Below are positions 18,001-57,600 of a DNA stretch of 64,000 nt, one piece after another. A program made the translations under genes and the position numbers. The notes beneath the pieces are model-generated. The model was not told the origin of the DNA, ran no database searches, and was given only the letters and a program-made list of their open reading frames with translations. This stretch comes from Takakia lepidozioides (lineage: Eukaryota; Plantae; Bryophyta), in assembly GCA_030704615.1 (NCBI GenBank), contig CM060732.1, positions 46,004,001 through 46,068,000 of the forward strand, in the 5' to 3' direction. The first letter of the stretch is position 1; every line of letters begins with the position of its first letter.

Positions 18001-21000
18001 TGCTTGGCAGCTTACCTGCATGAGGTGTTGACTTTTATAGACAACTCCTTGAGCAATAGTTGCTTTCGGGCTGCTTGCTAAGGGCCCCTCTCTGCTTGTG
18101 GAGGGTCCCTCTCTCTTTCTTGTTTCTTGCTTTCTGGTCCGATAAGCTCTTGGAGCTTTCCGCCATCGTTATAAGTATCATTTCATTTCTTCCTTGTTTG
18201 ACAAAAACCCCAAAACAAACTCTTCAAATGAATTCTCCCTCCTCTCTTGCTTTTGGATTCCCAATTTTTGTGGATAAGAAACTTTGTTTGTTGATTGTCT
18301 ACTCCTGCAGGGATACATTAGAGACGAACCATTTCATGCAACTCGCTGGGTGGCACCAGGCATGTCCTGCCCGAAAGTGGTAATGTGTCGATGCAACCTA
18401 AAAAATCTGCACGGCAATATCAATGGCCAGACACGCCTTAGAGACCAGGAGACCGTGACTGAGACTCTGACTAAAACAGCCAAGCCAAAGCCACTGGTAA
18501 AAATTGGCAAAAGTTGCATCAATGGCCACCGGTGGCTCTGTTCCAAGACTATAGCGGATGTGACGGAAGCTCTTATTGGTGCCTATTTGTTTGAAGGCGG
18601 CTCTGTTGCTGCTCTTAGTTTCATGCTTTGGGCTGGCATAGATATCAACTTTGACCCATCTCTGATGAAGACAGCAAGCAGGCGGTCATTAGTTGGTTTA
18701 GGTGTGAACCCTGGTGTAGATCTGGACAATCTGGAAAAAAGGATTGGATACACCTTTTGTAACAAGGGCCTCTTACTCGAAGCAATGACTCATGCTTCAT
18801 ACCAAGACCTCAAAGGAGGCTGCTGTTATCAGGTACACAATTGATTCCTCACCATGTCTGTTTGTCTTCTGTGAGTGCCCGTTTACTGTCTAGTGGAGAT
18901 TACATGATGTGTGTGGACTACATCTCTGTGCCATACAAAGTTGATATTGTGCCACATAGGCCATGCAGTTGAATGACATACTCTTTTGTCAGTGTTCTTT
19001 CTTTAAAAGGTGTTTCGAAAAGAAATGAAATGAAATGGTACTTTTATAACGTCCGCGGAATGCTCAAAGAAAAGAGAAAAGAAAGAAAAAGATGTAAGTG
19101 GTCCACCTAGAAGCAGAAAGTTGTTTCTCCATTCTCCTTCAAACCTAATTGTCAATATTTTGTCTCACCAATTTTGGCGGAAACAGCGACTCGAGTTTCT
19201 TGGAGATGCAGTCCTCGACTTGCTGATATCTCAGCACCTTTTTACGACACATCCAGGTCTGACTCCAGGGCGACTCACTGCTTTACGTTCAGCAGCTGTG
19301 AACAATGAGCGTTTTGCTCGTGTTGCAGTGCAACATAAATTCCATAGCTACCTGCGGCATGGCTCTGGTTTCCTGCTCAATCAGATCCAAGATTTTGTGA
19401 AGGCTATTGAGGCAGCTGGCAATGAGCAGAAGAATAGCTCATTTGGATGGGATGGAGTCCAAGGCCCAAAGGTAATTCGTCTACATCATCACACTTTGGT
19501 CAGAATAATAGCCTTGAAGTCCTTAAGTAGGAAGAGGAGTTTTAAAATGGTTAGGCATGTCACAGGGAGGCTAAAAGTCCTAGGCCTGATCATGAAAAGG
19601 AACACATTCTCCATCTTCCCTGTAATACATATCATGCAAGCATCCTAAGCTGGAAGTCCTCATTTTATGGGTTTGATGTCCGTAATGCACATAATTATAA
19701 AAACTGTGTCTCGTGCCTATGTACAGCAATATCCAAACCTAGGTATCATAAGACTTTGGAGGAAAATTCTGCCTTGCAGTCAAAGCTGCATAACAGTCCG
19801 GCATATGGAACACCAGAGCTCAAGTCCCAATGGTCACCTCACATATAGTTCTTAAAACTTCACTTGAAGCTGAGGTGCAATTCTTGTCTAGTGCTTGGTA
19901 TCTGGCTCTAACTTCCTGATTGCAGGTTCTGGGAGATCTAGTGGAAAGCATAGCGGGGGCTATTCTGGTGGACACCTGCTTCAATTTGGAAACTGTCTGG
20001 ACTGTCATGAAGCCACTATTGTCCCCAATTGTTACACCAGAGACTCTGACTCTGCACCCTGTTTGCGAGCTTCAGCAGCTGTGCAATCTGAAAGAATTTG
20101 AGTTGCACTGGCTTCTCACACAGGATGGCAACATGACAATTGCTACAGCTAAGGTAATTTTTCTGATCAGTGTTCAGCTGTTGGTCAAATGATGTACTAG
20201 TTGTGGGTGGAAAGGACACCGGTATTTCCTTTGTATCATCAGTCAACTTACCTTCTCTCATTTTTGGGTCTATCATCAGTTCAAAGGGGCATGATGATTC
20301 CTTGATTTGTAACAAATAAAAACTGATATAGTACCAAATTCTTTTCTCACATGCTCCAACCAGGTCAGGCCCAAGAAATCACCTAAAAATGGTCGCTGCA
20401 CCTGGCACTCTCCTAGTAGCATGCGGAACGTCAAAATGAATATGCATTAGACGTCTTTTGCTTGTGCGCCTCTACTTGGAAGGAGAAAATTCAACTATTG
20501 AAGTGTTCCTTTGAAATGTACTGATGAACTCTTATGCCATTATCCAGGTCAATACTGGGGATGACTCTATAGTAGGGACTTCACACAAGATTAAAGAAAA
20601 GACAGCAAAGAAGGACGCTGCACAGAAAATTTTAGCAATGCTGGAGGTGAGTGTTGGGGGGTTCTTGGCATCAACCCATGCCCACTCGTATTCACAATTG
20701 TTGTACAGTATTTGAATTCAGGGGGGTATCAAATTGCTGCTATAAGCAAATATTTGTCATGAATAATTGTACCCTTTGCTTGACAGACTCGGGGCCTTCG
20801 GCTTACCAGTGAAAGCACAGTACTCACCTCTTCACCATCAGAAATGGCCTTGCCAGTCCCCACACCAGCTTTTCCGAGTTATGTGGAGGTCTGCTCTGGC
20901 CTTGAAGCTGCAACTGTGGAGATCTGTCCTGGCCTGGAAGCCGCGACAATGGAGGTCTGTCCTGCCCGTGAAGCTGCAACATTGGAGGTCTGCCCTGGCC

Positions 21001-23897: not shown

Positions 23898-24149
23898 AAT
23901 AATGCCTCCTCATAAGCTTCACCAAGCCCAAAGATAAGGGTCCTGAAACAACCAGGAAATCAGAGGATACAATCAAGGCCCTTGACTTCCAACATCGAAA
24001 TTACCAGACACAAAATGACACATCCTGCGACAGCTTGAGACTTTACCAACTTTCAAATCAGTTCCAAGGCCAATCCATACCACTTCGAAACAAAACAAGT
24101 GCGGATGCCTCCATCAGCTATGGTTCGCTCGCAACGTATGTGAAAGAGA

Positions 24150-24757
24150 TGGCCTAGGGACCTCGAGATTTTGATGTCAACAGTGGCGGTGGCAGCATTT
24201 GGCTTCAATGCTGGTGCCTTGACAAGCTGGCTGTAGTTTCCCTTCTGCTTGAAGAGCTGAGAGTAGTGGTGTTTGCAATAGAGCCGACCTGCAAGGGCTG
24301 CATAGTTGGAGGGGCTGATCACACTGCCCCCATGCACACACTTGAAGCAATTCTTGTGATAGGGAAGGCTCTCCACGCTTGTCCTTTCAATGGGGTAGAC
24401 TGTCTTGTTGCATACACTTCTCTTGCGTCCCGGAAAACAGGAGCGAAGAGGGTGTCTTGTTCAAATTGTCCAGCTGCTGGTCAGACGGAGGCATATTTGG
24501 TGTTTACCCCATCGGCACTTTTGTTCTCAAAGCTCTTCTCATAGCTACCGGTCAGCTTGAACAGCTGGTTGAAATGCGGCTTGCAGTGAAGGACCCCTTC
24601 CAAGGATGCATAATTCCCCAGCTTCAAGGTTCCCTTGCAATGGTTGCGTCGGAAGCACGCCTTGTGGTAGATGATACCGTCGGCTGCCAACTGGTCGACC
24701 AGATACACCGTCTTCTGGCACGCCGTGCTTTTTGTTCTGTGTGCCTGAAAACGCCAT
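24150..24757 (-). pseudogene. Processed (intronless) pseudogene of a plant two-LIM-domain protein (WLIM/PLIM type)
   Basis: MAFSGTQ, frameshift, ACQKTVYLVDQLAADGIIYHKACFRRNHCKGTLKLGNYASLEGVLHCKPHFNQLFKLTGSYEKSFE; second LIM FSGTQEKC, frameshift, YHKNCFKCVHGGSVISPSNYAALAGRLYCKHHYSQLFKQKGNYSQL. No introns; frameshifts; a Zn-ligand Cys replaced by Arg. Confidence 0.9.
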
Positions 24758-24812
24758 AGCGATTCCCACACCACCCCCACACTTCTTCCTCTCTTCCCCT
24801 CCGACCTTGTCA

Positions 24813-27800
24813 ATGTCCTCGTGCTTCAGCAACGCAAACCCATCCACCGAAATGGGTTGGGAAGCAGCGCAGATCTGGCCCACAAGCCACGCGAGATCGG
24901 ATAGCTCGCGCGGCGCGAGCCTTGACAAGGTGACCTTTCTTCATGTAGGATGTGAAGGAGTCTCAGGGAGTTTGACGGACCTCTGTTATGATAGTATAGT
25001 GTGGACTGGATTGTACCCCTAGCTGTTGAGTGAAGTTGGAATTCCGCTTTGCTCTGCAAACTCTGCTTTTACTGTCAATATCGTAGGTTGCTCTACCTAA
25101 GCAGGGAATGAAAGTAGGGTGCGCAAGGTTTTTCCCTGGAGTTTGCAAGGTATCCGGAAGGTCTTAGGAGGCCGTGTGTTAAATCTATTCAGCTGCACTG
25201 TGGTGGTTCTCACAGACCAATCCGAGATTACCCGACTACAGACACAAACAAGAGGTACTTTGGGTTGATGGTTGGTTGAATCCTCCGTGGGTGAAAAAAG
25301 AACTACGGGCTTTCATGACACAAGGTCAAGGACAATGTGGTGAGGGCACCTTCTTCAACACATTTAGCCTGTTAAGCTATTATCACAGCCGTCCCTAGTT
25401 TTTCATGTTGAGTTCTGCAAGTGAGCTGATGGGGTGGATCTATGGTGGTTTGGAGTGAGTTTGACATGTTACTGCCAGTGTGGCAACAGGCAATTATCCA
25501 AAAACAGAAAATAGGGCTGAAGAGAAGATTTGGAAGGAATTTTTTTCGGACCCCAGTCAATGGTGGGACAATCAAGGCAAAAAGGTGAATATCTATTAAA
25601 TTACAGAGAGAAGCAGACAACAAGATGCGTCACAAAGCTTTCTTGAAAATTGTCATCCTCTCTCTTCCCAGCACATTTTGAAAGTCTTGGGAGTAATTCA
25701 GCATAGGAACTAGTCTGTGATAACTAGGGTTGGGGTGTCTGCTAGAAAAAAATTAGGTTGTCAATGTTGGCAGCTAGCAGCAAGGGGAGGATCTATGCAT
25801 TATTGGTGCCGAGGCCGGGATGGCTGAAGGAGCAGGGATGGAGTGTGGGTCCAGATTCATCCGAGAGGGCCAGATTTCAAGCACAAGATTACTTATGAAT
25901 CTCTGTGGATTGATAGCCATAAGAAACCTGCCTGGGTACATATTCAACTGGAAGCAGCAGTGGCTGCACAGTTGATAGAATCAGGCACCTCCACCATGAC
26001 CACAGCTTCCAAAAGAGGACCAACAGAGGGAATCCATAATACCTTTTCTGGACATATCAGGACACTATGTGAGGCAGGGCACCTCAAGGAGGCTCTACAG
26101 ATTTTGAACCAAGGAGGCATTTCAGCAGATTCAGATACTTACGTCTGTCTCTTGCATAAGTGCATCAAGACGAAAGGCCTGCAAGCCGGAAAGCAGGTGC
26201 ACGCTCACATTATCCAAAGTGGTTTCAAGCCAAACGTTTTTCTACACAACACCCTTGTTAATATGTATGTTAAGTGCGGGAGCATTGTGGATGCATACCA
26301 ATTGTTCAACAAGATGCCTGAACGACGTTTGATCACGTGGAATATTATGATGGCAGGATTTAACAAGCACAGGTGTGGTAAGAACGTTTTGGAGACATAT
26401 GAGCAAATGATAGCGGAAGGTATGAAGCCCAACCATATCACGTTTGTTAGCGTTTGCAATGCATGTGCGGGCCTGGCAGCCCTGGAAAAGGGCAAAGAGG
26501 TCCATGGTGAGATCATCAAAGCGGGAATTGTACCAGATGTCATTCTGAACAATACCCTGGTTGACATGTATGCCAAAGGTGGGAGCATCGAGGATGCAAA
26601 GGGAGTGTTCGACAATATGGCTGAACGAAATGTGGTGTCCTGGAGCACGATGATTACAGGGTATGCCCAGCATGGGTGCGGGATGGAGGCTTTGGAGACA
26701 TATGAGCAAATGATGCGGGAAGGGGTGAAGCCGGACCGGGTCACATTTGCTTGCGTTTGCAATGCATGCGCGAGCCTGAGAGCCCTGGACAAGGGCAAGG
26801 AGATCCATGGTGACATCATGACAGCGGGAATTGTACCAGATGTCGTTCTGAACAATACCCTGGTGGACATGTATGCCAAAGGCGGGAGCATTAAGGATGC
26901 AAAAGGAGTGTTTGACAATATGGCTGAACGAAATGTGGTGTCCTGGAGCGCGATGATCGCAGGATATGCCCAGCATGGGTGTGGGATGGAGGCTTTGGAG
27001 ACGTATGAGCAAATGATGCGGGACGGGGTGAAGCCCAACCACATTACGTTCGTTTGCGTTTGCAATGCATGCTCGAGCTTGAGAGCCCTGGAAAAGGGCA
27101 AGAAGGTCCATGCTGACATTGTTGAAGCGGGCATCGTACCAGATGTCATTCTGAATACTGCCCTGGTGGACATGTATGCCAAATGCAGCAGCATCAAGGA
27201 TGCAAAGCGAGTGTTTGACAATATGGCTGAACGAAATGTTGTGTCCTGGAGCGTGATGATCGCAGGCTATGCCCAGCATGGGTGCGGGATGGAGGCATTA
27301 GAGATGTATGAGCAAATGGTGGGGGAAGGGGTGAAGCCGGACCAGGTCACGTTTGCTTGCGTTTGCAATGCGTGCGCGAGCCTGGCAGCCCTGGAAAAGG
27401 GCAAAGAGATCCATGGTGACATTATCAAAGCGGGAATTGTACCAGATGTCATTCTGAACAATACCCTGGTGGATATGTATACCAAATGCGGGAGCATTGA
27501 GGATGCAAAGGGAATGTTTGACAATATGGCCGAACGAAATGTGGTGTCCTGGAGCGCGATGATCGCAGGATATGCCCAGCATGGTTGTCATAGGGAGGCC
27601 CTGCAACTATTTGAAGGAATGCAGAAGGAAGGCTTGAAGCCAGACAGTATTACCTTTATATGTGTTCTCTCTGCATGCAGTCACGTTGGCCTACTGGAGG
27701 AAGGAAGACGCTACTTTCATTCCCTGAGTCAAGATCATGGTGTCACTCCGACAGTAAAGCACTTTGGCTGCATGGTGGACCTTCTTGGACGTGCGGGGCG

Positions 27801-28464
27801 ATTGGATGAGGCAGAGGACCTCATTAATAAAATGCCAATCAAACCAGATGCTGTGGTGTGGAAGGCCTTGCTTGGTGCCTGCAGAATCCATGGCAATGTA
27901 GAGATGGCTGAACGTGCGGCAACGTCTATTCTCAAGTGGGATGAACAGGATGCCGGGACTTATGTGTTGCTATCAAACGTCTATGCCGCAGCTGGCAGGT
28001 GGGATGATACTGCAAGGGTGAGAAAAATGATGAAGGTCAGAGGCGTTAGAAAGGAGCCGGGTCGCTCCTGCATTGAGGTTGGCAACAGGGTGCACACCTT
28101 TCTTGTAGATGACAAATGGCATCCCAAAATTGACGAAATCCATGCCGAGCTGAGAAGATTGTCTGGGCAGATGAAGGAGGCAGGGTATGTGCCTGACACA
28201 CGCTTTGTATTGCATGATGTGGGGGAGGAGCGAAAGGAATTTTCTCTTTGCCTCCACAGTGAGAAGCTGGCCATTGGTTTTGGGCTTATCACCACAGCCC
28301 CTGGGACGCCTCTGCGCGTCATCAAGAATCTTCGGGTGTGTGGTGATTGCCACACCGCCACCAAGTTCATCTCAAAGATAGTTGGTCGAGCAATTGTGGT
28401 ACGGGATGCTAACCGGTTTCACCACTTTGAAGATGGGGTTTGTTCTTGTGGGGATTACTGGTGA
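24813..28464 (+). CDS. PLS-E-DYW PPR protein (17 PPR motifs) with N-terminal OSB-type PDF motifs (1.5 copies)
   Basis: Exons 24813-24929 (tentative start), 25216-25339, 25490-25584 and 25855-28464, all phase-consistent. L-S-(PLS)x4-P2L2S2, E1, E2, PG box PGRSCIE, HSEKLA, CGDCH, terminal DYW. The main exon is very secure; the start exon is uncertain. Confidence 0.9.
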
Positions 28465-29886: not shown

Positions 29887-30290
29887 TTACCAGTTTTCCC
29901 CACCACAGCAACAAACCACATCTTTAAAGTGGTGAAAAGGGATGCATACCATACAACAATTGCTCACCCAAAAGTCTTTCGAGATGCTCATGAAGCGTCT
30001 GGGAGGCACTAGACAATTTGGAGGCATCCCTGGGCCGTCCTGATCAGCCCAGAAGCCATGCCCAACTTCTCACTGTGGTGCCAAAGACAAAATTCTGTTT
30101 GCTCCTTCTGCACCCCGTTGAATGCAGCAGCTGACCTGGCAGCTTTTTGGCACTTTTGACTTTCATCAGTTTTCTCAACTTTGGAGTAAAGTTCCATCCG
30201 CCAGCTGCGCCATAGATATTGATAGCAACAATCCCTTTGCATATCTTCACATATGCAGATATAGTCAATAGCTAACATTCCACGGGAGTG
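29887..30290 (-). pseudogene. Degenerate E2-DYW fragment (third copy)
   Basis: YGAAGGW..LRKLMKVKSAKKLPG, EFCLWHHSEKLGMASGLIRTA, and a terminus homologous to CSCGxYW, with deletions and frameshifts. The 3' flank tggtaaaatgatgttttt is shared with the 30365 gene end. Confidence 0.85.
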
Positions 30291-30364
30291 GTGAATGAAC
30301 CCAGCAGCTGAATACTGCTAACAAATGAAGCAAGACACTTGCACCTTACCAGAAAAACATCATT

Positions 30365-33300
30365 TTACCAGTACTCCCCACAAGAACAAACCCCATCTTC
30401 AAATTGGTGAAAGCGGTTGGCATCTCGTACAATAATTGCTCGGCCAACAATCTTTGAGATGAACTTGGTGGCTGTGTGGCAGTCACCACACACCCGAAGG
30501 TTCTTGATGATACGAAGAGGTGTCCCTGGGGCTGTGCTGATCAGCCCAAAAGCAATAGCCAGCTTCTCACTGTGATGGCAAAGAGAAAACTCTTTATGCT
30601 CCTCCTCCACATCATGCAATACAAAGCGTGTATCAGGCACATAGCCTGCCTCCTTCATCTGGGCAGACAATCTTCTCAGCTCAACATGGATTTCCTCAGT
30701 TTTTGGGTGCAATTTGTCATCTACCACGAATGTGTGCACCCTGGTGCCAACCTCAATCCAGCAGCGGCCTGGCTGCTTTCTGACACCTCTGACATTCATC
30801 ATTTTTCTCACCTTTGCAGTATCATCCCACCTGCCAGCTGCAGCATAAACATTTGAAAGCAACACATACGTTGTAGCATCCTGTTGATGCCACTTGAGAA
30901 TATATTTTGCTGCACGTTCTGCAACCTCCACATTGCCATGGAGTCTGCAGGCACCAAGCAAGGCCTTCCACACCACAACATCTGGTTGGACTGGCATTTT
31001 GTCAATGAAGTCTTCAGCCTCATCCAATCGCCCCACACGGCCAAGAAGGTCAACGACACACCCAAAGTGCTCCACTGTAGGAGTGAGCCCATGGTCTCGA
31101 CTCAGGGAATCAAAGTAGTGTCTGCCTTCATCCAGCAGGCCCCCATGGCTACAAGCTTGGAGAACACATGTGAAGGTGATACTATTCGGCTTCAAGTCTT
31201 CCTTCTGCATTCCTTCAAATAGATGCAGAGCCTCCCTACAACAACCATGCTGAGCATATCCTGCGATCATCGCACTCCATGACACCAAATTTCGTTCAGC
31301 CAGATTGTCAAACAGTACCTTTGCATCCTTGATGCTCCCACATTTCGCATACATGTCCACAAGGGTATTATTCAGAATGACATCAGGTACAATTCCAGCT
31401 TTCATGATGTCAGCATGGACCTCTTTGCCCTTTTCAAGGGCTGCCATGCTGGCACACGCATTGCAAACGCCAACATACGTCACCTGGTCAGGCCTCACCC
31501 TTTCCCGCATCATTCCCTCATAGGTCTCCAAAGCCTCCATCCCACAACCATACTGGACATATCCTGCGATCATCACACTCCATGATACAACATCTCGTTC
31601 AGCCATATTGTTGAATACTCGCTTTGCATCTTTCATGCTCCCACATTTGGCATACATGTCCACAAGGGTATTGTCCAGAATGATATCAGGTACAATTCCA
31701 GCCTTCATGATGTCAGCATGGACCTCTTTGCCCTTCTCCAGGGCTGCCAGGCTGGCACACGCATTGCAAACACAAACAAACGTGACACGGTTGGGCTTCA
31801 CCCTGTCCCCCTTCATTTCCTCGTAGGTATCCAAAGCCTTCATGCAATTCCCATGCTGGGCATATCCTGCAATCAGCGCACTCCATGAGACCACATCTCG
31901 TTCAGCCATATTGTCGAACACTACCCTTGCATCTTTGATGCTCCCACATTTGGCATACATATCCACAAGAGTATTACCCAATATAACATTTGGTACGATT
32001 CCAGATTTGATGATGTCCGCATGGACCTCTTTGCCCTTTTCCAGGTCTGCCAGGCTGGTACACGCCTTGAGAACACAACTGAATGTGACCTGGTCAGGCG
32101 TCACACCTTCCTGTACCATTTGCTCATAGGCCTCGAAGGAATTCATAACACATCCATGTTTGGTATATCCTGCCATCATTATAGTCCACGAAAATATATT
32201 TCGTTCAGGCATTTTGTCAAACACTCGCTGTGCATCCACAATGCTCCCGCACTTGACATACATGTTGACAAGGGTGTTGTGTAGAAACACATTTGGCTTG
32301 AATCCACTTTGGATTATATGTGCATGCACCTGCTTTCCTGCTGCCAGGCATTTCATCTTGATGCACTTATACAAGAGAAATACATACATATCTAAATCTG
32401 CTGAAATACCTCCTTGATTCAAAATTTGTAGAGCCTCTTTCAGTTGCCCTGCCTCAGATAGTGTCCTCACATACCCAGAATTGCCAGAAGAGGTCTTGTG
32501 GACTCCCTCTCTTGGTCCTCTTTTGGAAGACGTGGCCATGGTGGAGGTGCCTGCTTTTGTCAACTGTACTGCTGGTGCTGCTTCCAGTTGACCATCTACC
32601 CATGCAGGTTTCTTATAGCTATCAATCCACAGGGGATCATAGGTGCTCTTGTTCTTGAAATCTGGCGCTCTCGGATGAATCTGGACCCACACTCCATCCC
32701 TGCCTCCTTCAGCTATCACTGCCTCGGCACCAATAATGCATAAGGTCCTACCCTTGCTGCTAGCAGCTAACAATGACAGCCTAAAAATGTCCTAGCAGAT
32801 ACCCTACGTATCCCACATTAGTTCCTATGCTGAATTGCTCCCAGGAGAGGGGGAGGATGACAATTCGCAAGAAAGCTTTGCAAGGAAGCTTGTTGTCTGC
32901 CTCTCTCTATGGCATAACAGACATTCACCTTTTTGCCTCGATTGTCCCACCATTGGCTGGGGTTCAAAAAATATTCCTTCCAAAGCTTCTCCTCATCTTT
33001 GTTTTCTGTTTCTGGATAATTGCCTGTTGCCACATCGGCAATAACAGGTGAAAAACACTCAGAACCACCACAGATCCAGCCACTGAGCTAACTTACAAAA
33101 CTCGACGTGAAAATCAGGGTCAAGTCTGATAAGAGGACAAAACAAGCTTAAAGGTGTCGAAGGAGGTGACCTCACCATATTGTCCTTTACGTTGTGTTGA
33201 GAAAGAAGCAAGCTTTTCTTTCACCCAAGGAGGATTCGACCAACCCTCAATCCAAAGGACCTCTTGTGTGCATTGCTTATGTGTGTAGTCCAATGATCTT

Positions 33301-34552
33301 GGGTTGGTCTGAAAACCACCACGGTGCAGCTGAGAAGCCACAATTTAAAGACAGCCTCCTAAGACCAAGCAGACATAACACGGACAGGAACAGCCACTTC
33401 CATAGTACAGACAAACATTCTTCACATCATGTAAGAAGAAATCCCACACCTTGCCATTGTGGTTGTCCCACCATTGTGAAGGATCTCTACAGAACTCCTG
33501 CCAGTGCTGTTCCATGCTCCATGGTTGACCTTCATGCCAGAAACTTAAAGACCATCACCGTATGTTCCTCATTGTGTTGAATGTAATAGAGCCCCGGATT
33601 GACTTGCATGAATGTTGTTGAAAGCTTACACTTGCACTCTAAACATGTCCAGACTTACAGATGCAAGTCAAGCTTGTGCATGACAAGGCTGCCCCTCTAA
33701 TCAGGCTCACTACAAGTCGTACTCACTTTCATCTTCAAATTTTGCAAAAGCTCCACCATCCACACCCAAATAAAAAACGCACTCCCATATCTTTCCACCG
33801 TCACAAAACTGTTCTCGACCTTGTGCCATGGCAATTAGCTTTTCTTTCACCCAAGGAGGATTGAACCAATCGTCAATCCACAGGACCTCTCGTGTGAACT
33901 GAATATTTCTGTAGTCTGGAGAGTTTGGATTGGTCTGTAAAAACCACCAGGGAAAAGCCGAGGAGTCACAATTTTAACAAGCCACAACCATCTGACCCTC
34001 CCCAAAATACCTCGCAAACTCCCAGAGAAGACCTTGCGCATCATCCTATCATGCCCGGCTGAGGATGAACAACCTACGATCCTGGAAATACTTACGGTAA
34101 GAGCAGTTTTTGAAGAACAAACCGAGATTCCAACATCATTGAACAACTGGTTGGTACAATCCAGTCTAAAAACTATCGTTATACCAGATTCAGTCCAACT
34201 CCCTCAATGATAAACACATACTACAAAATCTCACCTTGTCAATGGTGTAGTCCCACCGTTGTGAAGGATCTTTGAAGAACTCCTGCCATTGCTGTTTTAT
34301 GCTCCAACATTGACCTGCGCGCCAGATATACCAGTTATAGCCCTTGTGTGTGGTTTCTGCACAACCCAAGGAGCTCTGTCCGTGGCTCGTTGCCAAGGGT
34401 GAAGCCGGTTTCAGCTCCATAGCCCAGCCCCTGAATGTGCTTGATTTGCTGCATGACGATGTGGGGCCTCTGGCATGACCAAATCGAGAAGACGGGGCCT
34501 TGGGTAAGGAGTCCGCGTGCGCGCTTAGCAGAAGGCTGGAACACGCTTCCAT
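30365..34552 (-). CDS. Transit peptide + 3 OSB-type PDF motifs + PLS-E-DYW PPR protein (14 PPR motifs, ends EYW), ~1035 aa
   Basis: Exons 34552-34235, 33934-33783 (donor uncertain; 33805 is the alternative), 33543-33450 (acceptor uncertain), 33308-33176, 33023-32929 and 32680-30365. Ser-rich N-terminus MEACSSLLLSAHADSLPKAPSSRFGHARGPTSSCSKSSTFR; L-S-(PLS)x3-P2L2S2-E1-E2; PGRCWIE; HSEKLA; CGDCH. Confidence 0.9.
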
Positions 34553-35083
34553 CCCCACCAGCAAGTGAAGGAGGAGCAGAAAATACTTTCTTCTTGTCCG
34601 TGCACTTGGAACCCTAATTCAACACCACCAGGCTCTTTTATTTACATGGAAAGATCATCCAGCTTCAAGGATCACGCACAGGGTGTACACCATCATTGCT
34701 GCTCCAATTTCTGAAGACTCTTTCATTCTTCTCTCGCTGTCTCCCGTCACCAATCCCCACCCAAAGCAGAGGCTGCGTCTCGCTACCTCCCCAATTCACT
34801 TCCCAGCCAACGTCATTCTGCAGATTATCCAGAGCGTGTGCCATCAGAACGTGTTATCACTAGGCATTCCTCAAACTTCACTTGTGCAGACCAGCGCGGT
34901 GACTCAATTGTGTAGTGTTGAAGATAAAGACAGTTTTGAACTTTTATAATACCTCCACACCAACGTCATCGCATTTGAGGAAGGCGAGTTCCTCAAAAGG
35001 GAATCCGAGTCCTAATCCTAGCCCTAGCTGAGGGACAAGGAAACAGACCAAAGGAGAGGAAACAGCTCCCTGTCTCCACCAGG

Positions 35084-38000
35084 ATGGCTCGCCGTGGCAT
35101 TGGGAGACTCTGCACTATCCTACTCTTCGTGATAATTGGAGGTGTGGCACTTTACCAGGGTTTGTGGTCGATCCAAATGGAAATCGATCTGATGCGGGCT
35201 CGCAAAAATGGGTGGGTCTATTGGGCTTCTTACCCGGTTTGTGACTGTTTGGTCCAAATGGAATGGTTCTGATGGGGGTTCTGAGAGTGATATGGGTCGC
35301 CTCTTCTTGTTTGTGAATTTCAATCCTCCTGCCCATTCATTACCTTGGGTAAGTCAATTGAGCTGGTTACAGCTCTGGTGCTCAATGTCACAAGATTTGG
35401 TGCTTCCTTGTCTTACTTTTCGTCTGCTGCAGGAATCATTTTGAAAAACTTTGGACATCGTCAATGGACGAGGTGGCAGAATGGAGAAAGAAGTACGATG
35501 TTGAGAGTAGCAGAGCTGGCGAGCATCTCCGCAGTTTCACTGCGGTAGTAACCTGCCTGTCTTCGTAGCATTTCCTGAACATAGTCGTGATTCTTAAGGT
35601 GGGTGAATTCGTTAGTTCCTCCTGTAGGGATGGACACGAATTGTGTGAAAAACTTTTCAGCTTGTAGTACTGCCTATGATAGCGTGTCAAATTATTCACT
35701 ACGGAAGGGAACACCTAGAGACGATAATCATAGCCTAAGCTGCGAGCATTCGTTCAGGACCCTTGATTCTTACTAGAAATGAGGTCTCTAGTCTCTACTC
35801 CCTGAAAGTTTGAAGTTGTAAAGCTGAGGTCAGTAGGTGTGATTTCTTGTATCCTAGAATTTTTCACAATTGTGGTTATCATAGCAGACCAGCTTCTACA
35901 TGGCTTACACGAGAGATGGTCTGTTTCGAGGCAGCTCTGTTGATGACGAGCTTACAGTACATTCCACATATGAGGCAGGAAAGAAATATAGATTGACATG
36001 GTCTGTGAAGAATCGTGCAATGTAGGCATCCAGATCCAGTTGTATGTCATCACATGTGTATAAATATCTCCCTGATGTTTGAGTGTACTTGTATGCATGG
36101 TTGGGGCAGATAACTCAGCAGCTGCAAAACAAGAGTGACAGTGCTGCTGCTCTAGAGCATGAAAAGAGTAGACTGGAGAAGGTGTGTCTAACTGCTGTTT
36201 CTCATTTTTCATTTTTTCTGTCTCTCTCCTTAAGCAGTTAAGCATAGTAGAACCTAGATATCCTGCAAGGAGTCCGCTCTCTTTTTCTCTGTTTGCACGG
36301 TTTGGTTTCTGTTCTACCTCTCTCTAACGTACCGTTGAGATAATAGATTTCTGTCTCTTTTTCTCTCTCCCTCTCTTTTGTGTGTTCCTTGAGCCCTCCA
36401 GGCCTCCTGCGGGTGTAGCAATTTCCTAGTCTCTCTACAGAAAATCTGGAAGCCCACAACTTTGATTTCAAAATCGAGTTCCAGGCCCTCTGCTTACTGT
36501 GCTCCTCCCATCCCTCTCCCTTTGGTGCCACGGGCCCTTCAAGCCTCCTGTGGATGGAGTAATTTCTCTTTCTCTCTCTCTCTTTCTGTCTCTGGGCGCT
36601 CTCTTCAAATCTATTAAGGGTATTGTGCCTGTACCCCTGTTTACCAACTTTGAAAGTCTCGAGGCTGAGCCAAAAGCCCAGGCCCTCCTGAGGCCTAGTT
36701 TTTGGGCAAATCACACACAGCAGATTGATGCTTGTGTGAAGGGATTTCTAGAGGATATCTGGAAAACCCGGATTAATTCTATATATGGAGGTAAGTCTTA
36801 CTACCAACGTCAGCCCCTGACAGAGGTAGGTTCTGTCCCTTTTGTTCCCGCTCAAACTGGGCGCGGGGTCAATGGCCACAAGGCTACGGCAAACAACGTC
36901 TTATGAGTACAATCTTTCTGTCTCTGGGTCTATGGCCACAAGGCTATAGCAAACGTTGTCTTATGGGTACATTCTCTTTGTCTCTCTATGGCAAACGTCT
37001 TATGAGTACATTCTGTTTTTGTCTGCGGATAGAGACTTGTAGGTGGGCAAATCTGTGACGTGACGACCTGCTTGCACTGGGAACCACAGGGAAATTGAAA
37101 GTGGAGAACATCTCCTCATTCTGTGCCCTTTATACTATGAGATTGGTGGGAGATTCAACTGTCTAATCCAGGATACCCAATCTCTCACGGAGGACTTGAA
37201 TCACAAGGATAAACAATACTTGGCAGCTTACCTGCATGAAGCGTTGACTCTTAGACAATCCCTTGAGCAATAATCGCATTTGGGCTGCTTGTGGCCGACC
37301 CCTCTCTCTTTCTTTTTTCATTCTTCCTCTTGTCCCATAAGCTCTTTGAGCTTCCCACAGACGTTATGAAGTACCAATTCATATCAATGAAAACTTCCTT
37401 GAACTTGTTTACGTGGGTGAGGACCTTAAGGATGATCTGAAGGGCCTACTACCCTTGGCACTAGACTGAATTTTAAACTCAGGGCGGAGAGTCTACCTTT
37501 GAACAAAAAACAGATGCACAGAGGAGAGGGAGATTGTCGATGCCCGATGTGCAGAGGCAATATCCAATTTCTGATACAGGGTTCTGGGGTATTCTCATGA
37601 GAGAGTCCGTCTTCAAGACCATCAAGAACGTAGTCCCTGCACCTCTGTTCACCAACTTTGGAAATCTCGAGGCTGAGCCTAAAACCTTGGCCCTGTTGGG
37701 GTCTAATTGCTGGGCAGTTCACACACAGCAGATTGATGCTTGTGTGAAGGGATTTCTAGAGGAAATGTGGAAAGCCTGAACCAATTGTTTATACCAAGGT
37801 AAGTCCCACTACTGGAGTGAGTCGCTCACAAAGGTTGTGTCTGTTCCCTGTTGTTTCGCCCAAACTGGGTGTGGGGTCTATGGCCACAGGGCCACAGCAA
37901 ACGTCTTACATTCGATCTTGTTCCACCCACACTGTGCACGGGGTCTATGGCTACAAGGCTACAGTTATGAGTACATTCTCTCTCTCATCCCTATCTTAAG

Positions 38001-54699: not shown

Positions 54700-57600
54700 C
54701 CCTCCAAGCTGAACCTATCTTGAGGTTAAAGATCTTCCAATTCATAGGCAATACTGTGGGGCACGCACAATCTTCATAAATGTGCAAGCATTTCCATAGG
54801 ACGAATGCACGTGTGGTTGTATGGAAACATCCGATTGTTTAGCACAACATGCATGCCAGTTAATTTGTCAACAAGGTCCATTGTGGTCGCAGCTAGACCA
54901 ACTATATCTTAAAGATGTAGGTAGTAGTCTGCGGGAAAAAAAAAAAAAAAAACTCGAATTCCCCATCAAATTCATGATAAAAGAATCTCTTGATATTAGC
55001 CTTATATGGCGTACCAACATCAGGGTCTCATTGAACAACAAAGTCACATCCGAGCTTGTAAAGTTCACCTTCATTCCAATCACCAATGACTCCTTTATCT
55101 CTCAAATATTCAGTTGTGTACCTTTCAAATTCCATGGGCATGGTTTCATTCTTGGTATCCTGCCTTCTCACCATAATTCGCTTGGAAGCTAACAACATCG
55201 TGCAAGCATTAGTCGAGACGATCTTCTGGGGACAGTCCCAAACTTCTTTGGCTTTTTCAATACTGGGAACTTGAATGACACACACTTCGAGTGCCATGGG
55301 AGACATGAAGTGTCATCCTCTGCATGTTGTCTCACACCCTCAGGAAAAATCAAATACTTGTGCACAATTAGCATACACCTCTATTCCTTCGGCAAACCAT
55401 CTTCATCAACTTGGAGTTGTCTCATGACCTTGATAAAAGTTTGCCCCGCATAATACTGAATATAAGATACTTCCATCTATTTGTAATTGATCGAAACCTT
55501 GTGAAATCTTAACGATAGGCGTTCGTAGGGAAAATGCCAATACACCTCATGAGGTCCAAACCGTAGTACGTCTTCAAGCACATAGGCAGCACCTAGAACA
55601 CACAAACCAAGTCTATTGGCTTATCCATACATATGAGTTGTCACTCCACAATCTGAATAACTGTGGGACTTGTTGATGTTGGTTCACACAAGAAGAAGAA
55701 AAAAAAGGCAATACACATATGAAGATCAAAGCAACTGAAGACTTCACACACCTGAAACATGCTCTAAGGGGGCCCCATTTGGCCCATCCAACTCATCTGA
55801 CGGAACACGCCAATATCCAAGCAATGTCTTTACAACTTGAATGTCTTCTGTGGTCAATCCGTAGCCCTAGAATATTTGAATAGATAGTGGCAAATGTCCA
55901 CCAAAATGAGCCCCAACTATTGTCTTGCCTCATAAATCCAACTGCCAACCATATTCAAAACATGAGGCAGAACCCATTATACAAATAACTGGCTTTCTAC
56001 TACCATAAAAGATGTATGATTCTCCACAGGGTTGTGTGGCCACCGACCTTGCCGTAATTCATATGGTCGTTCAACTGATACCATGGAACACAAAGATCTC
56101 ATTTCCTCAAAATCAACCCCAGTACCTCTGAGGTCATGCAGTGTAGTTTTTGAAAAGGTTGAGACTTTGTGATGTGCATGACATTGAAGACTAAATCCAA
56201 AGAAATATCAAAATCATAAAGATGATATAAACGCCAAAGGACATGGGTAGTGGTAGGATAGGGTATCTCACTTTTGGCAGATGGTGACGTCCATGAAAGT
56301 CCATTTTTTTTAAAGCATATTTTTTCAGTTTGATTCTTATAAAGATAGACAATAGTATATTTAAAATATTTAGTAAAGGGACTAACCCCAAATATTATAG
56401 ATATTATTTATTATAAATCTTAATCTTTAATTGGAAAAAACTTTTAGGACTCAAATCTTAGAGCGTATGACCATTTGTCCATATACTACCTGGCCATCCT
56501 GATTATGTGTTTGTATATTTATTAATAAGAGATGATATCCCAAAAACCCAAAAGACAATATGCTATGGACTAATGAAAAACACAGATATATATATATATA
56601 TAGCTTGATAAAACTTTGATAGATTTCCAACTACTTTCACCTATTGAAACATTACACAATTTCTATACATGGCTTTGTGTCCATCACAATTGGTTACATT
56701 GAGATATATTTCTTAGAGTTCATAGCACAAAAAACTGAGCCGATGACAAAACAGTGTTTTGAGATTCAAAAGTCCATAACATTCTTATAGTTCATACAAT
56801 TTACGAAAAAATTATTACATTATATAGGTCTCGTACGTGGTATACAAGAACCAAAGTCTTTTATAATAAAGATGAACTATTGTGAACAAAGAAAAAGATA
56901 ACATAAAGCCAATCACTGAAAAACTGTCTGATGACGTCCAGACTAAGACCCCCTAGCCTGCAACTGCTCACAAATTCCCGTGATATACCACCTTCTTGTA
57001 GTAGAACTTCTTTATCTTGCGCACTCGATGCTTGCTTCCATCTCCTTATACTGGCATACAATTCATCACTCGAACGCCTCAATAGAGGCGCGATCAACTG
57101 TTGGCGGTTGTTACTATACACATAGTGCCCACTCACATAGGCTGAATGGTAAACACACCTTCGACACGGTGATTTGCCAAAGGACTTGAGCATTCCAATC
57201 TTTGTTTGGGCAGGATGATCCCCCGTAAACAGCATCAACATCACCCTCAAAGTGACAAGACCTCTTGGGGTGGCAAGATGCCTACTAATCAACTGAGAGG
57301 CATATGAATAGTTAGTATTAAAGCCCTCTTTGAATAATGATTCTAACTCTTCAACAAATGGATGAAGAAATAATGTCGTAGCTTCTTTCACTCTTGCAAG
57401 AAGGACATCTTGTACCTGTGCAATGGAATGAACAACAGAGGGATGATGCCTAGAGTATCATTTTTTCCAGTATTCAATATTCGGACCTCAGCAAGTTACC
57501 CAACAACTCCGGGTGCGGCGGTTGGAATCCATTCCAATGAGCATCAGACCAATGTTTATGGGGTCATCCTAGTAAACACACTTCAGACAATCAAAATTAG

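What the first reader, a model, noticed from the sequence alone, without database searches (positions are those of the whole stretch)
30365..34552. OSB-type PDF (ssDNA-binding) motifs fused to a PPR-DYW cytidine deaminase
Seen: five small upstream exons, missed by the ORF track, splice in frame onto the PLS-DYW exon and encode three tandem motifs: WQEFFKDPSQRWDYTIDK/TNPNSPDYRN..EVLWIDDWFNPPWV, WQEFCRDPSQWWDNHNGK/TNPRSLDYTHK..EVLWIEGWSNPPWV and WKEYFLNPSQWWDNRGKK/IHPRAPDFKNKSTYDPLWIDSYKKPAWV. Known: this matches the PDF motif of plant organellar ssDNA-binding OSB proteins, where it mediates ssDNA binding. PLS-E-DYW proteins are C-to-U RNA-editing deaminases that normally have only a transit peptide before the PPR array. 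Inference: a fusion of transit peptide, ssDNA-binding repeats, a programmable PPR array and an intact HxE/CxxC deaminase could tether editing to nucleoids or transcription bubbles (co-transcriptional editing), or deaminate ssDNA site-specifically. I know of no functional description of this architecture, but cannot exclude unannotated database homologues.
Basis: partly seen in the sequence, partly recalled or inferred. Interest (0 to 1): 0.93.

Follow-up and report, generated by a model that had tools for sequence, protein, structure and literature searches.

The report
RNA-editing gene carrying OSB PDF motifs
This plant gene encodes an organellar RNA-editing enzyme (PPR-DYW type) that carries, in front of its RNA-reading repeats, three copies of the small "PDF" module known from the organellar single-stranded-DNA-binding OSB proteins, a combination found in mosses and lycophytes but not described in any paper I could search.

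Summary
On the minus strand, six exons (34552-30365) join with GT-AG introns into 1049 codons: a Ser/Thr-rich N-terminus, three PDF motifs, about 15 PLS-type PPR motifs, E1/E2 and an intact DYW deaminase.

- **Motif identity.** An HMM built only from angiosperm OSB PDF motifs finds exactly the six half-motifs of this gene and three of a paralogue at 25216-28464. Nothing else in the window scores.
- **Shared intron.** Each motif is split by a phase-0 intron at the same position as in an elm OSB gene and in PDF-PPR genes of Diphasiastrum and Sphagnum. This supports homology and an old exon-level fusion.
- **One exon.** The last half-motif lies in the same exon as the PPR array, so this is not two genes merged by mistake.
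- **Motif quality.** Only the motif next to the PPR array is near-canonical (13 of 15 invariant residues). The other two are degenerate (9 and 8 of 15).
- **Expression.** Support is partial. One contig from a probable RNA run ends exactly at the exon-1 donor, and intron 1 has no coverage.
- **Function.** The role of the PDF part is untested. Most likely it adds single-strand binding or nucleoid tethering to an ordinary C-to-U RNA editor; ssDNA deamination is improbable.

This scan had already noted the same architecture many times elsewhere in this genome.

The parts
34235..34552 (-). Exon 1: ATG at 34552, a Ser/Thr-rich, acid-poor N-terminus (possible organellar presequence), and the first half of PDF motif 1 (34241-34297). 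The donor AAG|GTGAGA follows 34235.
   Evidence: HMM hit E 0.049 at HMM positions 1-19. A near-identical contig of run X1 ends exactly at 34235, and intron 1 has zero depth.
33727..33934 (-). Exon 2: second half of PDF motif 1 (degenerate, PDYRNI in place of PDFKHK) plus a linker. An alternative in-frame donor follows 33799.
   Evidence: HMM hit E 1.4e-7. Splice context and alternative donor.
33450..33529 (-). Exon 3: first half of PDF motif 2. The acceptor position is uncertain.
   Evidence: HMM hit E 3.4e-4 at HMM positions 1-21. A contig identical to the window covers 33510-33705, which includes part of intron 2.
33176..33308 (-). Exon 4: second half of PDF motif 2 (LDYTHK in place of PDFKHK) plus a linker.
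   Evidence: Best HMM hit in the window, E 1e-10 at HMM positions 22-54.
32929..33023 (-). Exon 5: first half of PDF motif 3, including WWDNR.
   Evidence: HMM hit E 3e-8. BLASTP against Elaeis OSB1 gives E 7e-9.
32585..32680 (-). Start of exon 6: second half of PDF motif 3 (PDFKNK), in the same exon as the PPR array.
   Evidence: HMM hit E 1.5e-6. It aligns to the PDF motif of Diphasiastrum P0013 at E 1e-12.
30941..32479 (-). PLS-class PPR array of about 15 motifs, containing four near-identical P-L-S triplets.
   Evidence: Pfam PPR_2 4.8e-71, PPR 8.2e-65, PPR_1 4.2e-50. Motif count by reading the translation.
30368..30940 (-). E1/E2 motifs and the DYW cytidine deaminase domain (30368-30646), with HSE and CGDCH present and a C-terminus of EYW. 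The stop codon is 30365-30367.
   Evidence: Pfam E_motif 4.1e-19 and DYW_deaminase 1.9e-43 at profile positions 1-93 of 93. PDB matches: 9kfx 7.5e-80, 7w86 1.5e-44, 7o4e 6.3e-43.
25216..28464 (+). Paralogue B, convergent with gene A. Its exons are 25216-25339, 25490-25584 and 25855-28464, giving one and a half PDF motifs, a longer PPR array and an E-DYW end. Its first exon is lost: only the donor at about 24929 remains.
   Evidence: HMM hits E 2.3e-9, 5.2e-6 and 1.7e-8. 606 of 768 aligned residues match gene A's exon 6.

Best explanation
Gene A is a nuclear gene for an organelle-targeted, site-specific C-to-U RNA-editing factor of the PLS-E1-E2-DYW type. It belongs to an old subfamily, apparently not yet described, in which one to three OSB-type PDF modules sit between the presequence and the PPR array.

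Shown:
- The gene structure and the homology of the motifs to OSB PDF motifs.
- The shared phase-0 intron inside the motif.
- The same exon layout in a lycophyte and a moss.
- An intact catalytic DYW domain.

Inferred:
- The PPR array reads an RNA sequence upstream of a target C, and the DYW domain deaminates that C. This is the established mechanism of the family.
- The PPR-proximal PDF module, the only well-kept one, adds a sequence-unspecific contact with single-stranded nucleic acid. That contact either raises affinity for the transcript or holds the factor at the nucleoid, where nascent RNA and ssDNA lie together.
- The two distal, degenerate modules contribute little or act as spacers.
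- The fusion arose by exon shuffling of the two-exon PDF unit from an OSB-like gene before mosses and vascular plants split. In this locus it was extended by tandem duplication of the unit.
For: - **Gene model.** It is in frame with canonical splice sites.
- **Motif specificity.** The OSB-only HMM hits each half-motif and nothing else in 64 kb.
- **Homology to OSB.** A PPR-linked PDF motif retrieves OSB1/OSB2 at about E 1e-19.
- **Shared intron.** The intron falls after the Lys at HMM position 21, phase 0, in Ulmus OSB, Diphasiastrum PDF-PPR-DYW and Sphagnum PDF-PPR, as in all three motifs here.
- **Homologous proteins.** Five of the 150 best representatives carry a full PDF motif before their PPR array. 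Among them, P0065 (957 aa) ends in DYW.
- **Fold.** The PDF model is confident (pLDDT 89.7). It matches one SSB/OSB cluster and three PPR/DYW clusters of Streptophyta at TM 0.84-0.87.
- **Deaminase.** The DYW domain is intact.
- **Selection.** Ka/Ks against paralogue B is 0.22 for exon 6 and 0.31 for pooled PDF codons.
- **Transcription.** A contig ends at the e1 donor, intron 1 has zero depth, and 44-45 distinct contigs at 90% or more identity overlie PDF motif 3. The fusion is therefore a multi-copy family in this organism.
- **OSB biochemistry.** PDF is reported to be responsible for ssDNA binding in OSB proteins, which prefer ssDNA to dsDNA or RNA (PMC4166229, PMC6963530).
Against: - No binding, localisation or editing data exist for any PDF-PPR protein.
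- Motifs 1 and 2 have lost 7 and 6 of the 15 invariant residues.
- In the PDF region, exon divergence between A and B (K 0.14-0.26) is about the same as intron divergence (0.18-0.30), so purifying selection on the PDF exons is only weakly shown.
- The sequencing runs are labelled RNA only as a guess. One contig covers part of intron 2, and no junction of introns 1-4 was listed explicitly.
- One paralogue-grade contig joins the e5 donor to a point 13 nt upstream of the modelled e6 acceptor.
- The closest Ginkgo proteins lack the motif, so editing factors of this type work without it.
Confidence: 0.6

Rival explanations
1. An ordinary editing factor with vestigial PDF repeats. The protein is made and edits RNA, but in this copy the PDF modules are an inherited, decaying N-terminal extension with no role of their own.
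For: Two of three motifs are degenerate. Exon and intron divergence are similar in the PDF region. PDF-less relatives exist in Ginkgo.
Against: The motif next to the PPR array keeps 13 of 15 invariant residues in both A and B. The architecture and intron position persist from moss to lycophyte. No stop or frameshift occurs in any PDF exon.
Confidence: 0.2
2. The PDF modules act as a protein-protein or oligomerisation surface rather than by binding nucleic acid. They might dock the editor to OSB or nucleoid proteins, or provide helper contacts of the kind that MORF/RIP proteins supply in seed plants.
For: The PDF model is a compact helix-strand-helix unit with no nucleic-acid-binding fold match in the PDB (best Z 4.3). 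AtOSB2 is reported as a tetramer (PMC6963530). From my own knowledge, not tested here, such lineages lack MORF proteins.
Against: The only published activity of the motif is ssDNA binding. Its invariant residues are aromatic and basic, as expected for stacking on and charge contacts with single strands.
Confidence: 0.1
3. A silent or dying duplicate. Gene A is one of many recent copies and is not translated into the full fusion protein, because of intron 2 retention or a long 5' leader.
For: Paralogue B beside it has lost exon 1. A DYW relic lies just downstream. Earlier notes of this scan report broken copies elsewhere. A contig identical to the window covers part of intron 2, and reading through intron 2 meets a stop at about 33710.
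Against: All 3150 coding nucleotides are open and the splice sites are canonical. Ka/Ks is 0.22 over the 768 aligned codons of exon 6. A contig ends at the e1 donor and intron 1 has no depth.
Confidence: 0.07
4. A programmable ssDNA deaminase. The PDF modules place the DYW domain on single-stranded organellar DNA and it deaminates C in DNA.
For: Only that the PDF motif binds ssDNA in OSB proteins and that an active-looking deaminase is present.
Against: The DYW domain is near-identical in its key motifs to RNA-editing DYW domains. PPR arrays read RNA. Nothing in the sequence departs from RNA editors, and a DNA mutator in organelles would be costly.
Confidence: 0.03

Closest known systems
PLS-E-DYW RNA-editing factors (for example Arabidopsis OTP86 and DYW1, PDB 7o4e and 7w86; synthetic PPR-DYW, PDB 9kfx)
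   Same: PLS PPR array, E1/E2 motifs, and a DYW deaminase with HSE and CxDCH. The C-terminal 150 residues match 9kfx at E 7.5e-80.
   Different: Described members have only a transit peptide before the PPR array (PMC9459714, Fig. 2 legend). This gene has about 280 extra N-terminal residues holding three PDF motifs, encoded by five small exons.
[quoted passage not shown] 2006, as reviewed in PMC4166229 and PMC6963530)
   Same: The same roughly 50-aa PDF motif in one to three tandem copies, with the same phase-0 intron inside the motif. A nuclear gene, presumed to be organelle-targeted like the OSBs.
   Different: No SSB-like OB-fold domain (PF00436) is present. The PDF motifs are N-terminal rather than C-terminal and are followed by a PPR-DYW editor.
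Unnamed PDF-PPR(-DYW) proteins of Diphasiastrum complanatum (for example KAJ7558693.1 and KAJ7568880.1) and Sphagnum (for example KAH8950714.1)
   Same: The same order of presequence, one or two PDF motifs and a PLS PPR array, with a DYW end seen in Diphasiastrum P0065. The second half of the last PDF motif shares an exon with the PPR array, and the intron position is the same. The PPR part is 53-54% identical to P0003 and P0013.
   Different: Here there are three motifs, two of them degenerate, and a longer linker. Those proteins are annotated only as hypothetical or PPR proteins and have no study behind them.
PPR proteins with an added nucleic-acid-binding domain, for example maize PPR4 with an N-terminal RRM (PMC9459714)
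   Same: An accessory single-strand-binding module placed N-terminal to a PPR array.
   Different: PPR4 is a P-class splicing factor and its module is an RRM, which is unrelated to PDF.

Membership tests
PLS-class PPR-E-DYW RNA-editing factor | Tandem P-L-S pentatricopeptide repeats | tested here: met
   Pfam PPR_2 4.8e-71, PPR 8.2e-65, PPR_1 4.2e-50. About 15 motifs by reading the translation.
PLS-class PPR-E-DYW RNA-editing factor | E1/E2 motifs between the PPR array and the deaminase | tested here: met
   PF20431 E_motif 4.1e-19. PF20430 E+ scores only 0.0035, below its cut-off.
PLS-class PPR-E-DYW RNA-editing factor | Complete DYW deaminase domain with the zinc-binding HxE and CxxCH signatures | tested here: met
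   PF14432 at 1.9e-43 covering profile positions 1-93 of 93. HSE and CGDCH are seen aligned to 9kfx.
PLS-class PPR-E-DYW RNA-editing factor | Import into plastids or mitochondria and editing of a defined C | not testable with these tools
   Only composition is available: the first 60 residues have 17 Ser/Thr, 6 Arg/Lys and 3 Asp/Glu. No organelle genome of this species was at hand.
OSB (organellar ssDNA-binding) proteins | PDF motif | tested here: met
   An HMM from 12 OSB proteins hits all six half-motifs at E 1e-10 to 0.049. Motif 3 keeps 13 of 15 invariant residues, motif 2 keeps 9 and motif 1 keeps 8.
OSB (organellar ssDNA-binding) proteins | SSB-like OB-fold domain (PF00436) N-terminal to the PDF motifs | tested here: not met
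   No Pfam hit in exons 1-5 at E up to 1. The reading frame is closed by a stop just upstream of the ATG. This gene is therefore not an OSB.
OSB (organellar ssDNA-binding) proteins | Preferential binding of ssDNA | not testable with these tools
   Known for AtOSB1 and AtOSB2 only (PMC4166229).
PDF-PPR subfamily (database proteins, undescribed) | PDF motif directly before the PLS array, with its second half in the PPR exon | tested here: met
   Seen in the window and in loci L001 (Diphasiastrum) and L003 (Sphagnum).
PDF-PPR subfamily (database proteins, undescribed) | Phase-0 intron after the Lys at motif position 21 | tested here: met
   All three motifs of gene A and both of gene B have it, as do L001, L002 (the Ulmus OSB gene) and L003.

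The most novel reading that the evidence does not exclude
The PDF modules hold a programmable PPR-DYW deaminase on single-stranded DNA of the organellar nucleoid. Editing in these plants would then be coupled to transcription or replication intermediates. In the extreme form, the enzyme would also deaminate C in ssDNA at PPR-specified places, giving a route by which edits or mutations become fixed in organellar DNA.
Probability: 0.08. Interest if true: 0.9.

Novelty: new variant of a known kind. Interest (0 to 1): 0.62.

Why it matters
PPR-DYW proteins are the enzymes of plant organellar RNA editing, and moss members are used as programmable base editors in bacteria and human cells. A conserved extra module taken from the organellar ssDNA-binding OSB proteins would be a new functional part of these editors, present from mosses to lycophytes. 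It could explain how editors in plants without MORF helpers find or hold their substrates. It also gives a testable link between the nucleoid and RNA editing, and a domain to try in engineered editors. For OSB biology, it shows that the PDF motif is a mobile two-exon module rather than a private feature of one family.

Tried and rejected
**Searches that found nothing**
- Word-indexed protein searches with the N-terminal half-motif of exon 6 and of paralogue B. The half-motif is too short and too diverged to share words with database proteins.
- Foldseek of the PDF model against the PDB.
- The exhaustive VIA search of the PDB gave a best Z of 4.3, which is noise level, so no fold-based clue to mechanism emerged.
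- The ESM Atlas search by language-model features gave no usable hit.
- The look-up of encoding contigs for P0065 and P0196 returned 'not on record'. Sister proteins P0176, P0195 and P0185 worked.

**Read evidence**
- The junction table of read laying was filled by paralogue noise from the PPR repeats.
- The one joint near intron 5 (32693 to 32929) matches my donor but not my acceptor. I treat it as a paralogue or an alignment artefact, not as support.

**Readings rejected**
- An OSB gene adjacent to a PPR gene and wrongly merged. The last half-motif and the PPR array are one open exon, and no OB-fold is present.
- A chance resemblance. The HMM hits are specific and the intron position is shared.

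Continuity was checked from exon lengths, phases and the two split codons only.
- The species of the window could not be named. The best matches to the PPR part are Ginkgo and Diphasiastrum proteins at 53-55% identity.
Full report
**What is in the sequence**

The minus strand holds an 802-aa ORF (30365-32773). Landmarks fix a six-exon model:
- e1 34552-34235
- e2 33934-33727
- e3 33529-33450
- e4 33308-33176
- e5 33023-32929
- e6 32680-30365

Every intron is GT-AG, with lengths of 300, 197, 141, 152 and 248 nt. The exon lengths sum to 3150 nt, or 1049 codons plus a stop. The two codons split by introns read AGT and GGC, and none of the six pieces has an internal stop. Continuity rests on lengths and phases.

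The reading frame of e1 is closed by a stop at about 34619, so ATG 34552 is its first ATG. The first 60 residues are rich in Ser/Thr and poor in acidic residues. That fits an organellar presequence but does not prove one.

**The C-terminal two thirds are an ordinary editing factor**

Pfam finds PPR families (down to 4.8e-71), the E motif (4.1e-19) and a full-length DYW deaminase (1.9e-43) in e6, and nothing in e1-e5. Reading the translation gives about 15 P/L/S motifs, then E1, E2 and DYW. The last 150 residues match the solved synthetic PPR-DYW protein 9kfx at 7.5e-80, and DYW1 and OTP86 at about 1e-44. HSE and CGDCH are in place.

**The upstream motifs are OSB PDF motifs**

Pfam has no PDF model, so I built the test from database proteins.
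- An exhaustive phmmer search with e6 against 1.84 billion representatives gave 37,988 hits. Five of the best 150 carry a complete PDF-like motif before their PPR array.
- Four of the five are from Diphasiastrum complanatum and one is from Sphagnum fallax. All are annotated only as hypothetical or PPR proteins.
- The PDF region of one of them (P0003, residues 20-80) retrieved named OSB1 and OSB2 proteins with the SSB domain PF00436. E-values were 5e-20 to 3e-18 for a database of 5.8 billion, at 58-70% identity.
- From 12 such OSB proteins I built an HMM and searched all 3054 six-frame pieces of the window. It hit nine pieces and nothing else below E 1.7.
- Six of the nine are in this gene (1e-10, 3e-8, 1.4e-7, 1.5e-6, 3.4e-4, 0.049) and three are in a paralogue. 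First halves align to HMM positions 1-21 and second halves to 22-54.
- Direct BLASTP agrees.

Fifteen residues are invariant across OSB and PPR-linked PDF motifs. Motif 3, next to the PPR array, keeps 13 of them, motif 2 keeps 9 and motif 1 keeps 8. Diphasiastrum proteins with two motifs show the same pattern: a good proximal motif and decayed distal ones.

**Shared gene structure**

In the window each motif is cut by a phase-0 intron after the Lys at motif position 21. The second half of the last motif is the start of the PPR exon. The same intron position and phase occur in an Ulmus OSB gene (L002), a Diphasiastrum PDF-PPR-DYW gene (L001) and a Sphagnum PDF-PPR gene (L003). In the latter two the last half-motif again continues into the PPR region.

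This rules out both convergence and a merged gene prediction. It points to a single old exon-shuffling event that moved the two-exon PDF unit from an OSB-like gene in front of a PPR gene.

An AlphaFold model of the motif is confident (pLDDT 89.7; helix, small sheet, helix).
- It finds no solved fold.
- In the ESM Atlas it matches one SSB/OSB cluster and three separate PPR/DYW clusters of Streptophyta (57, 63 and 127 members) at TM 0.84-0.87.
- The fusion is therefore widespread.
- The closest Ginkgo proteins have a plain N-terminus.

**The neighbourhood**

A paralogue, B, lies convergently at 25216-28464, with 606 of 768 aligned residues identical in the last exon. It has one PDF unit fewer. 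Its intron resembles both intron 1 and intron 3 of A, so A gained a unit by tandem duplication. B has lost its first exon: only the donor remains, next to a LIM-domain retro-pseudogene on the other strand.

Ka/Ks between A and B is 0.22 for the PPR-DYW exon and 0.31 for pooled PDF codons. Raw exon divergence in the PDF region (0.14-0.26) is no lower than intron divergence (0.18-0.30). Selection on the PDF exons of these two copies is therefore only weakly shown.

**Expression**

Two small runs of the same species label, marked RNA only as a guess, were laid on 30000-35500.
- A 1833-nt contig with two mismatches in 976 nt ends exactly at 34235, the modelled e1 donor. The strand context there is a minus-strand GT.
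- Intron 1 (34048-34231) has zero depth in both runs, while e1 and e2 are covered.
- This favours spliced RNA.
- Against a clean picture, a contig identical to the window covers part of intron 2. The listed joints were swamped by PPR paralogues.
- One joint uses my e5 donor but lands 13 nt upstream of my e6 acceptor.
- 44-45 distinct contigs at 90% or more identity overlie PDF motif 3, and depth there equals that of the PPR repeats. The PDF-PPR fusion is thus a large family in this organism.

Earlier notes of this scan say the same for other places in the genome. I used them as leads only.

**How it most likely works**

By the established mechanism of its family, the PPR array binds a specific RNA sequence and the DYW domain deaminates a C four nucleotides downstream.

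The PDF motif is reported to be responsible for ssDNA binding in OSB proteins, which prefer ssDNA to dsDNA or RNA (PMC4166229 and PMC6963530). Its invariant residues are aromatic and basic. The most economical reading is that the proximal motif adds unspecific single-strand binding, or tethers the editor to the nucleoid. This is inference, and I give the whole statement 0.6.

The rivals are:
- vestigial repeats (0.2)
- a protein-contact role (0.1)
- a silent copy (0.07)
- ssDNA deamination (0.03)

**Novelty**

Four full-text searches combining 'PDF motif' or OSB1 with PPR, DYW or RNA-editing terms found no description of the fusion. A broader OSB, DYW and PPR search surfaced nothing relevant either. 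A review of moss PPR proteins shows only a transit peptide before the PPR array. The proteins exist in public databases without names. It is a new variant of a known kind, already met repeatedly by this scan in the same genome.

Noticed in passing
window 24053-24928 (minus strand): A LIM-domain gene copy without introns, with its two LIM pieces in different reading frames (Pfam PF00412, 7e-9 and 5e-7). It looks like a processed pseudogene. It abuts the place where paralogue B's first exon should be.
   Followed up: partly
window 25216-28464 (plus strand): Paralogue B of the PDF-PPR-DYW gene, convergent with gene A. It has an 869-codon last exon ending in DYW and a near-canonical PDFKHK motif, but its exon 1 is lost, so it has no start codon or presequence of its own.
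   Followed up: yes
window 30009-30278 (minus strand): A relic of a third DYW domain just downstream of gene A's stop codon (PF14432, E 8.8e-5, below the family cut-off). This suggests repeated local duplication of the 3' end.
   Followed up: partly
window 35084-35272 (plus strand): A divergent neighbour gene. Its ORF starts with a hydrophobic N-terminus and has no Pfam match. Contigs of both runs break at 35210/35211, where the plus strand reads like a splice donor. One contig is continuous from there to gene A's exon-1 donor at 34235. I read that as a merge of the two genes' head-to-head transcripts, which would mean their 5' ends overlap; this is an inference.
   Followed up: partly
window 19121-19648 (plus strand): An ORF with a ribonuclease III domain (PF00636, 6.9e-18), probably one exon of a Dicer-like gene upstream of paralogue B.
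   Followed up: no
window 56861-57391 (minus strand): A weak match to the tnp2 family transposase (PF02992, 2.5e-4, below the cut-off), probably a transposon remnant.
   Followed up: no
ESM Atlas fold search, not in the window: The PDF fold model also resembles two clusters of phage (Uroviricota) hypothetical proteins at TM by query of 0.59-0.64. This could be chance for so small a domain.
   Followed up: no
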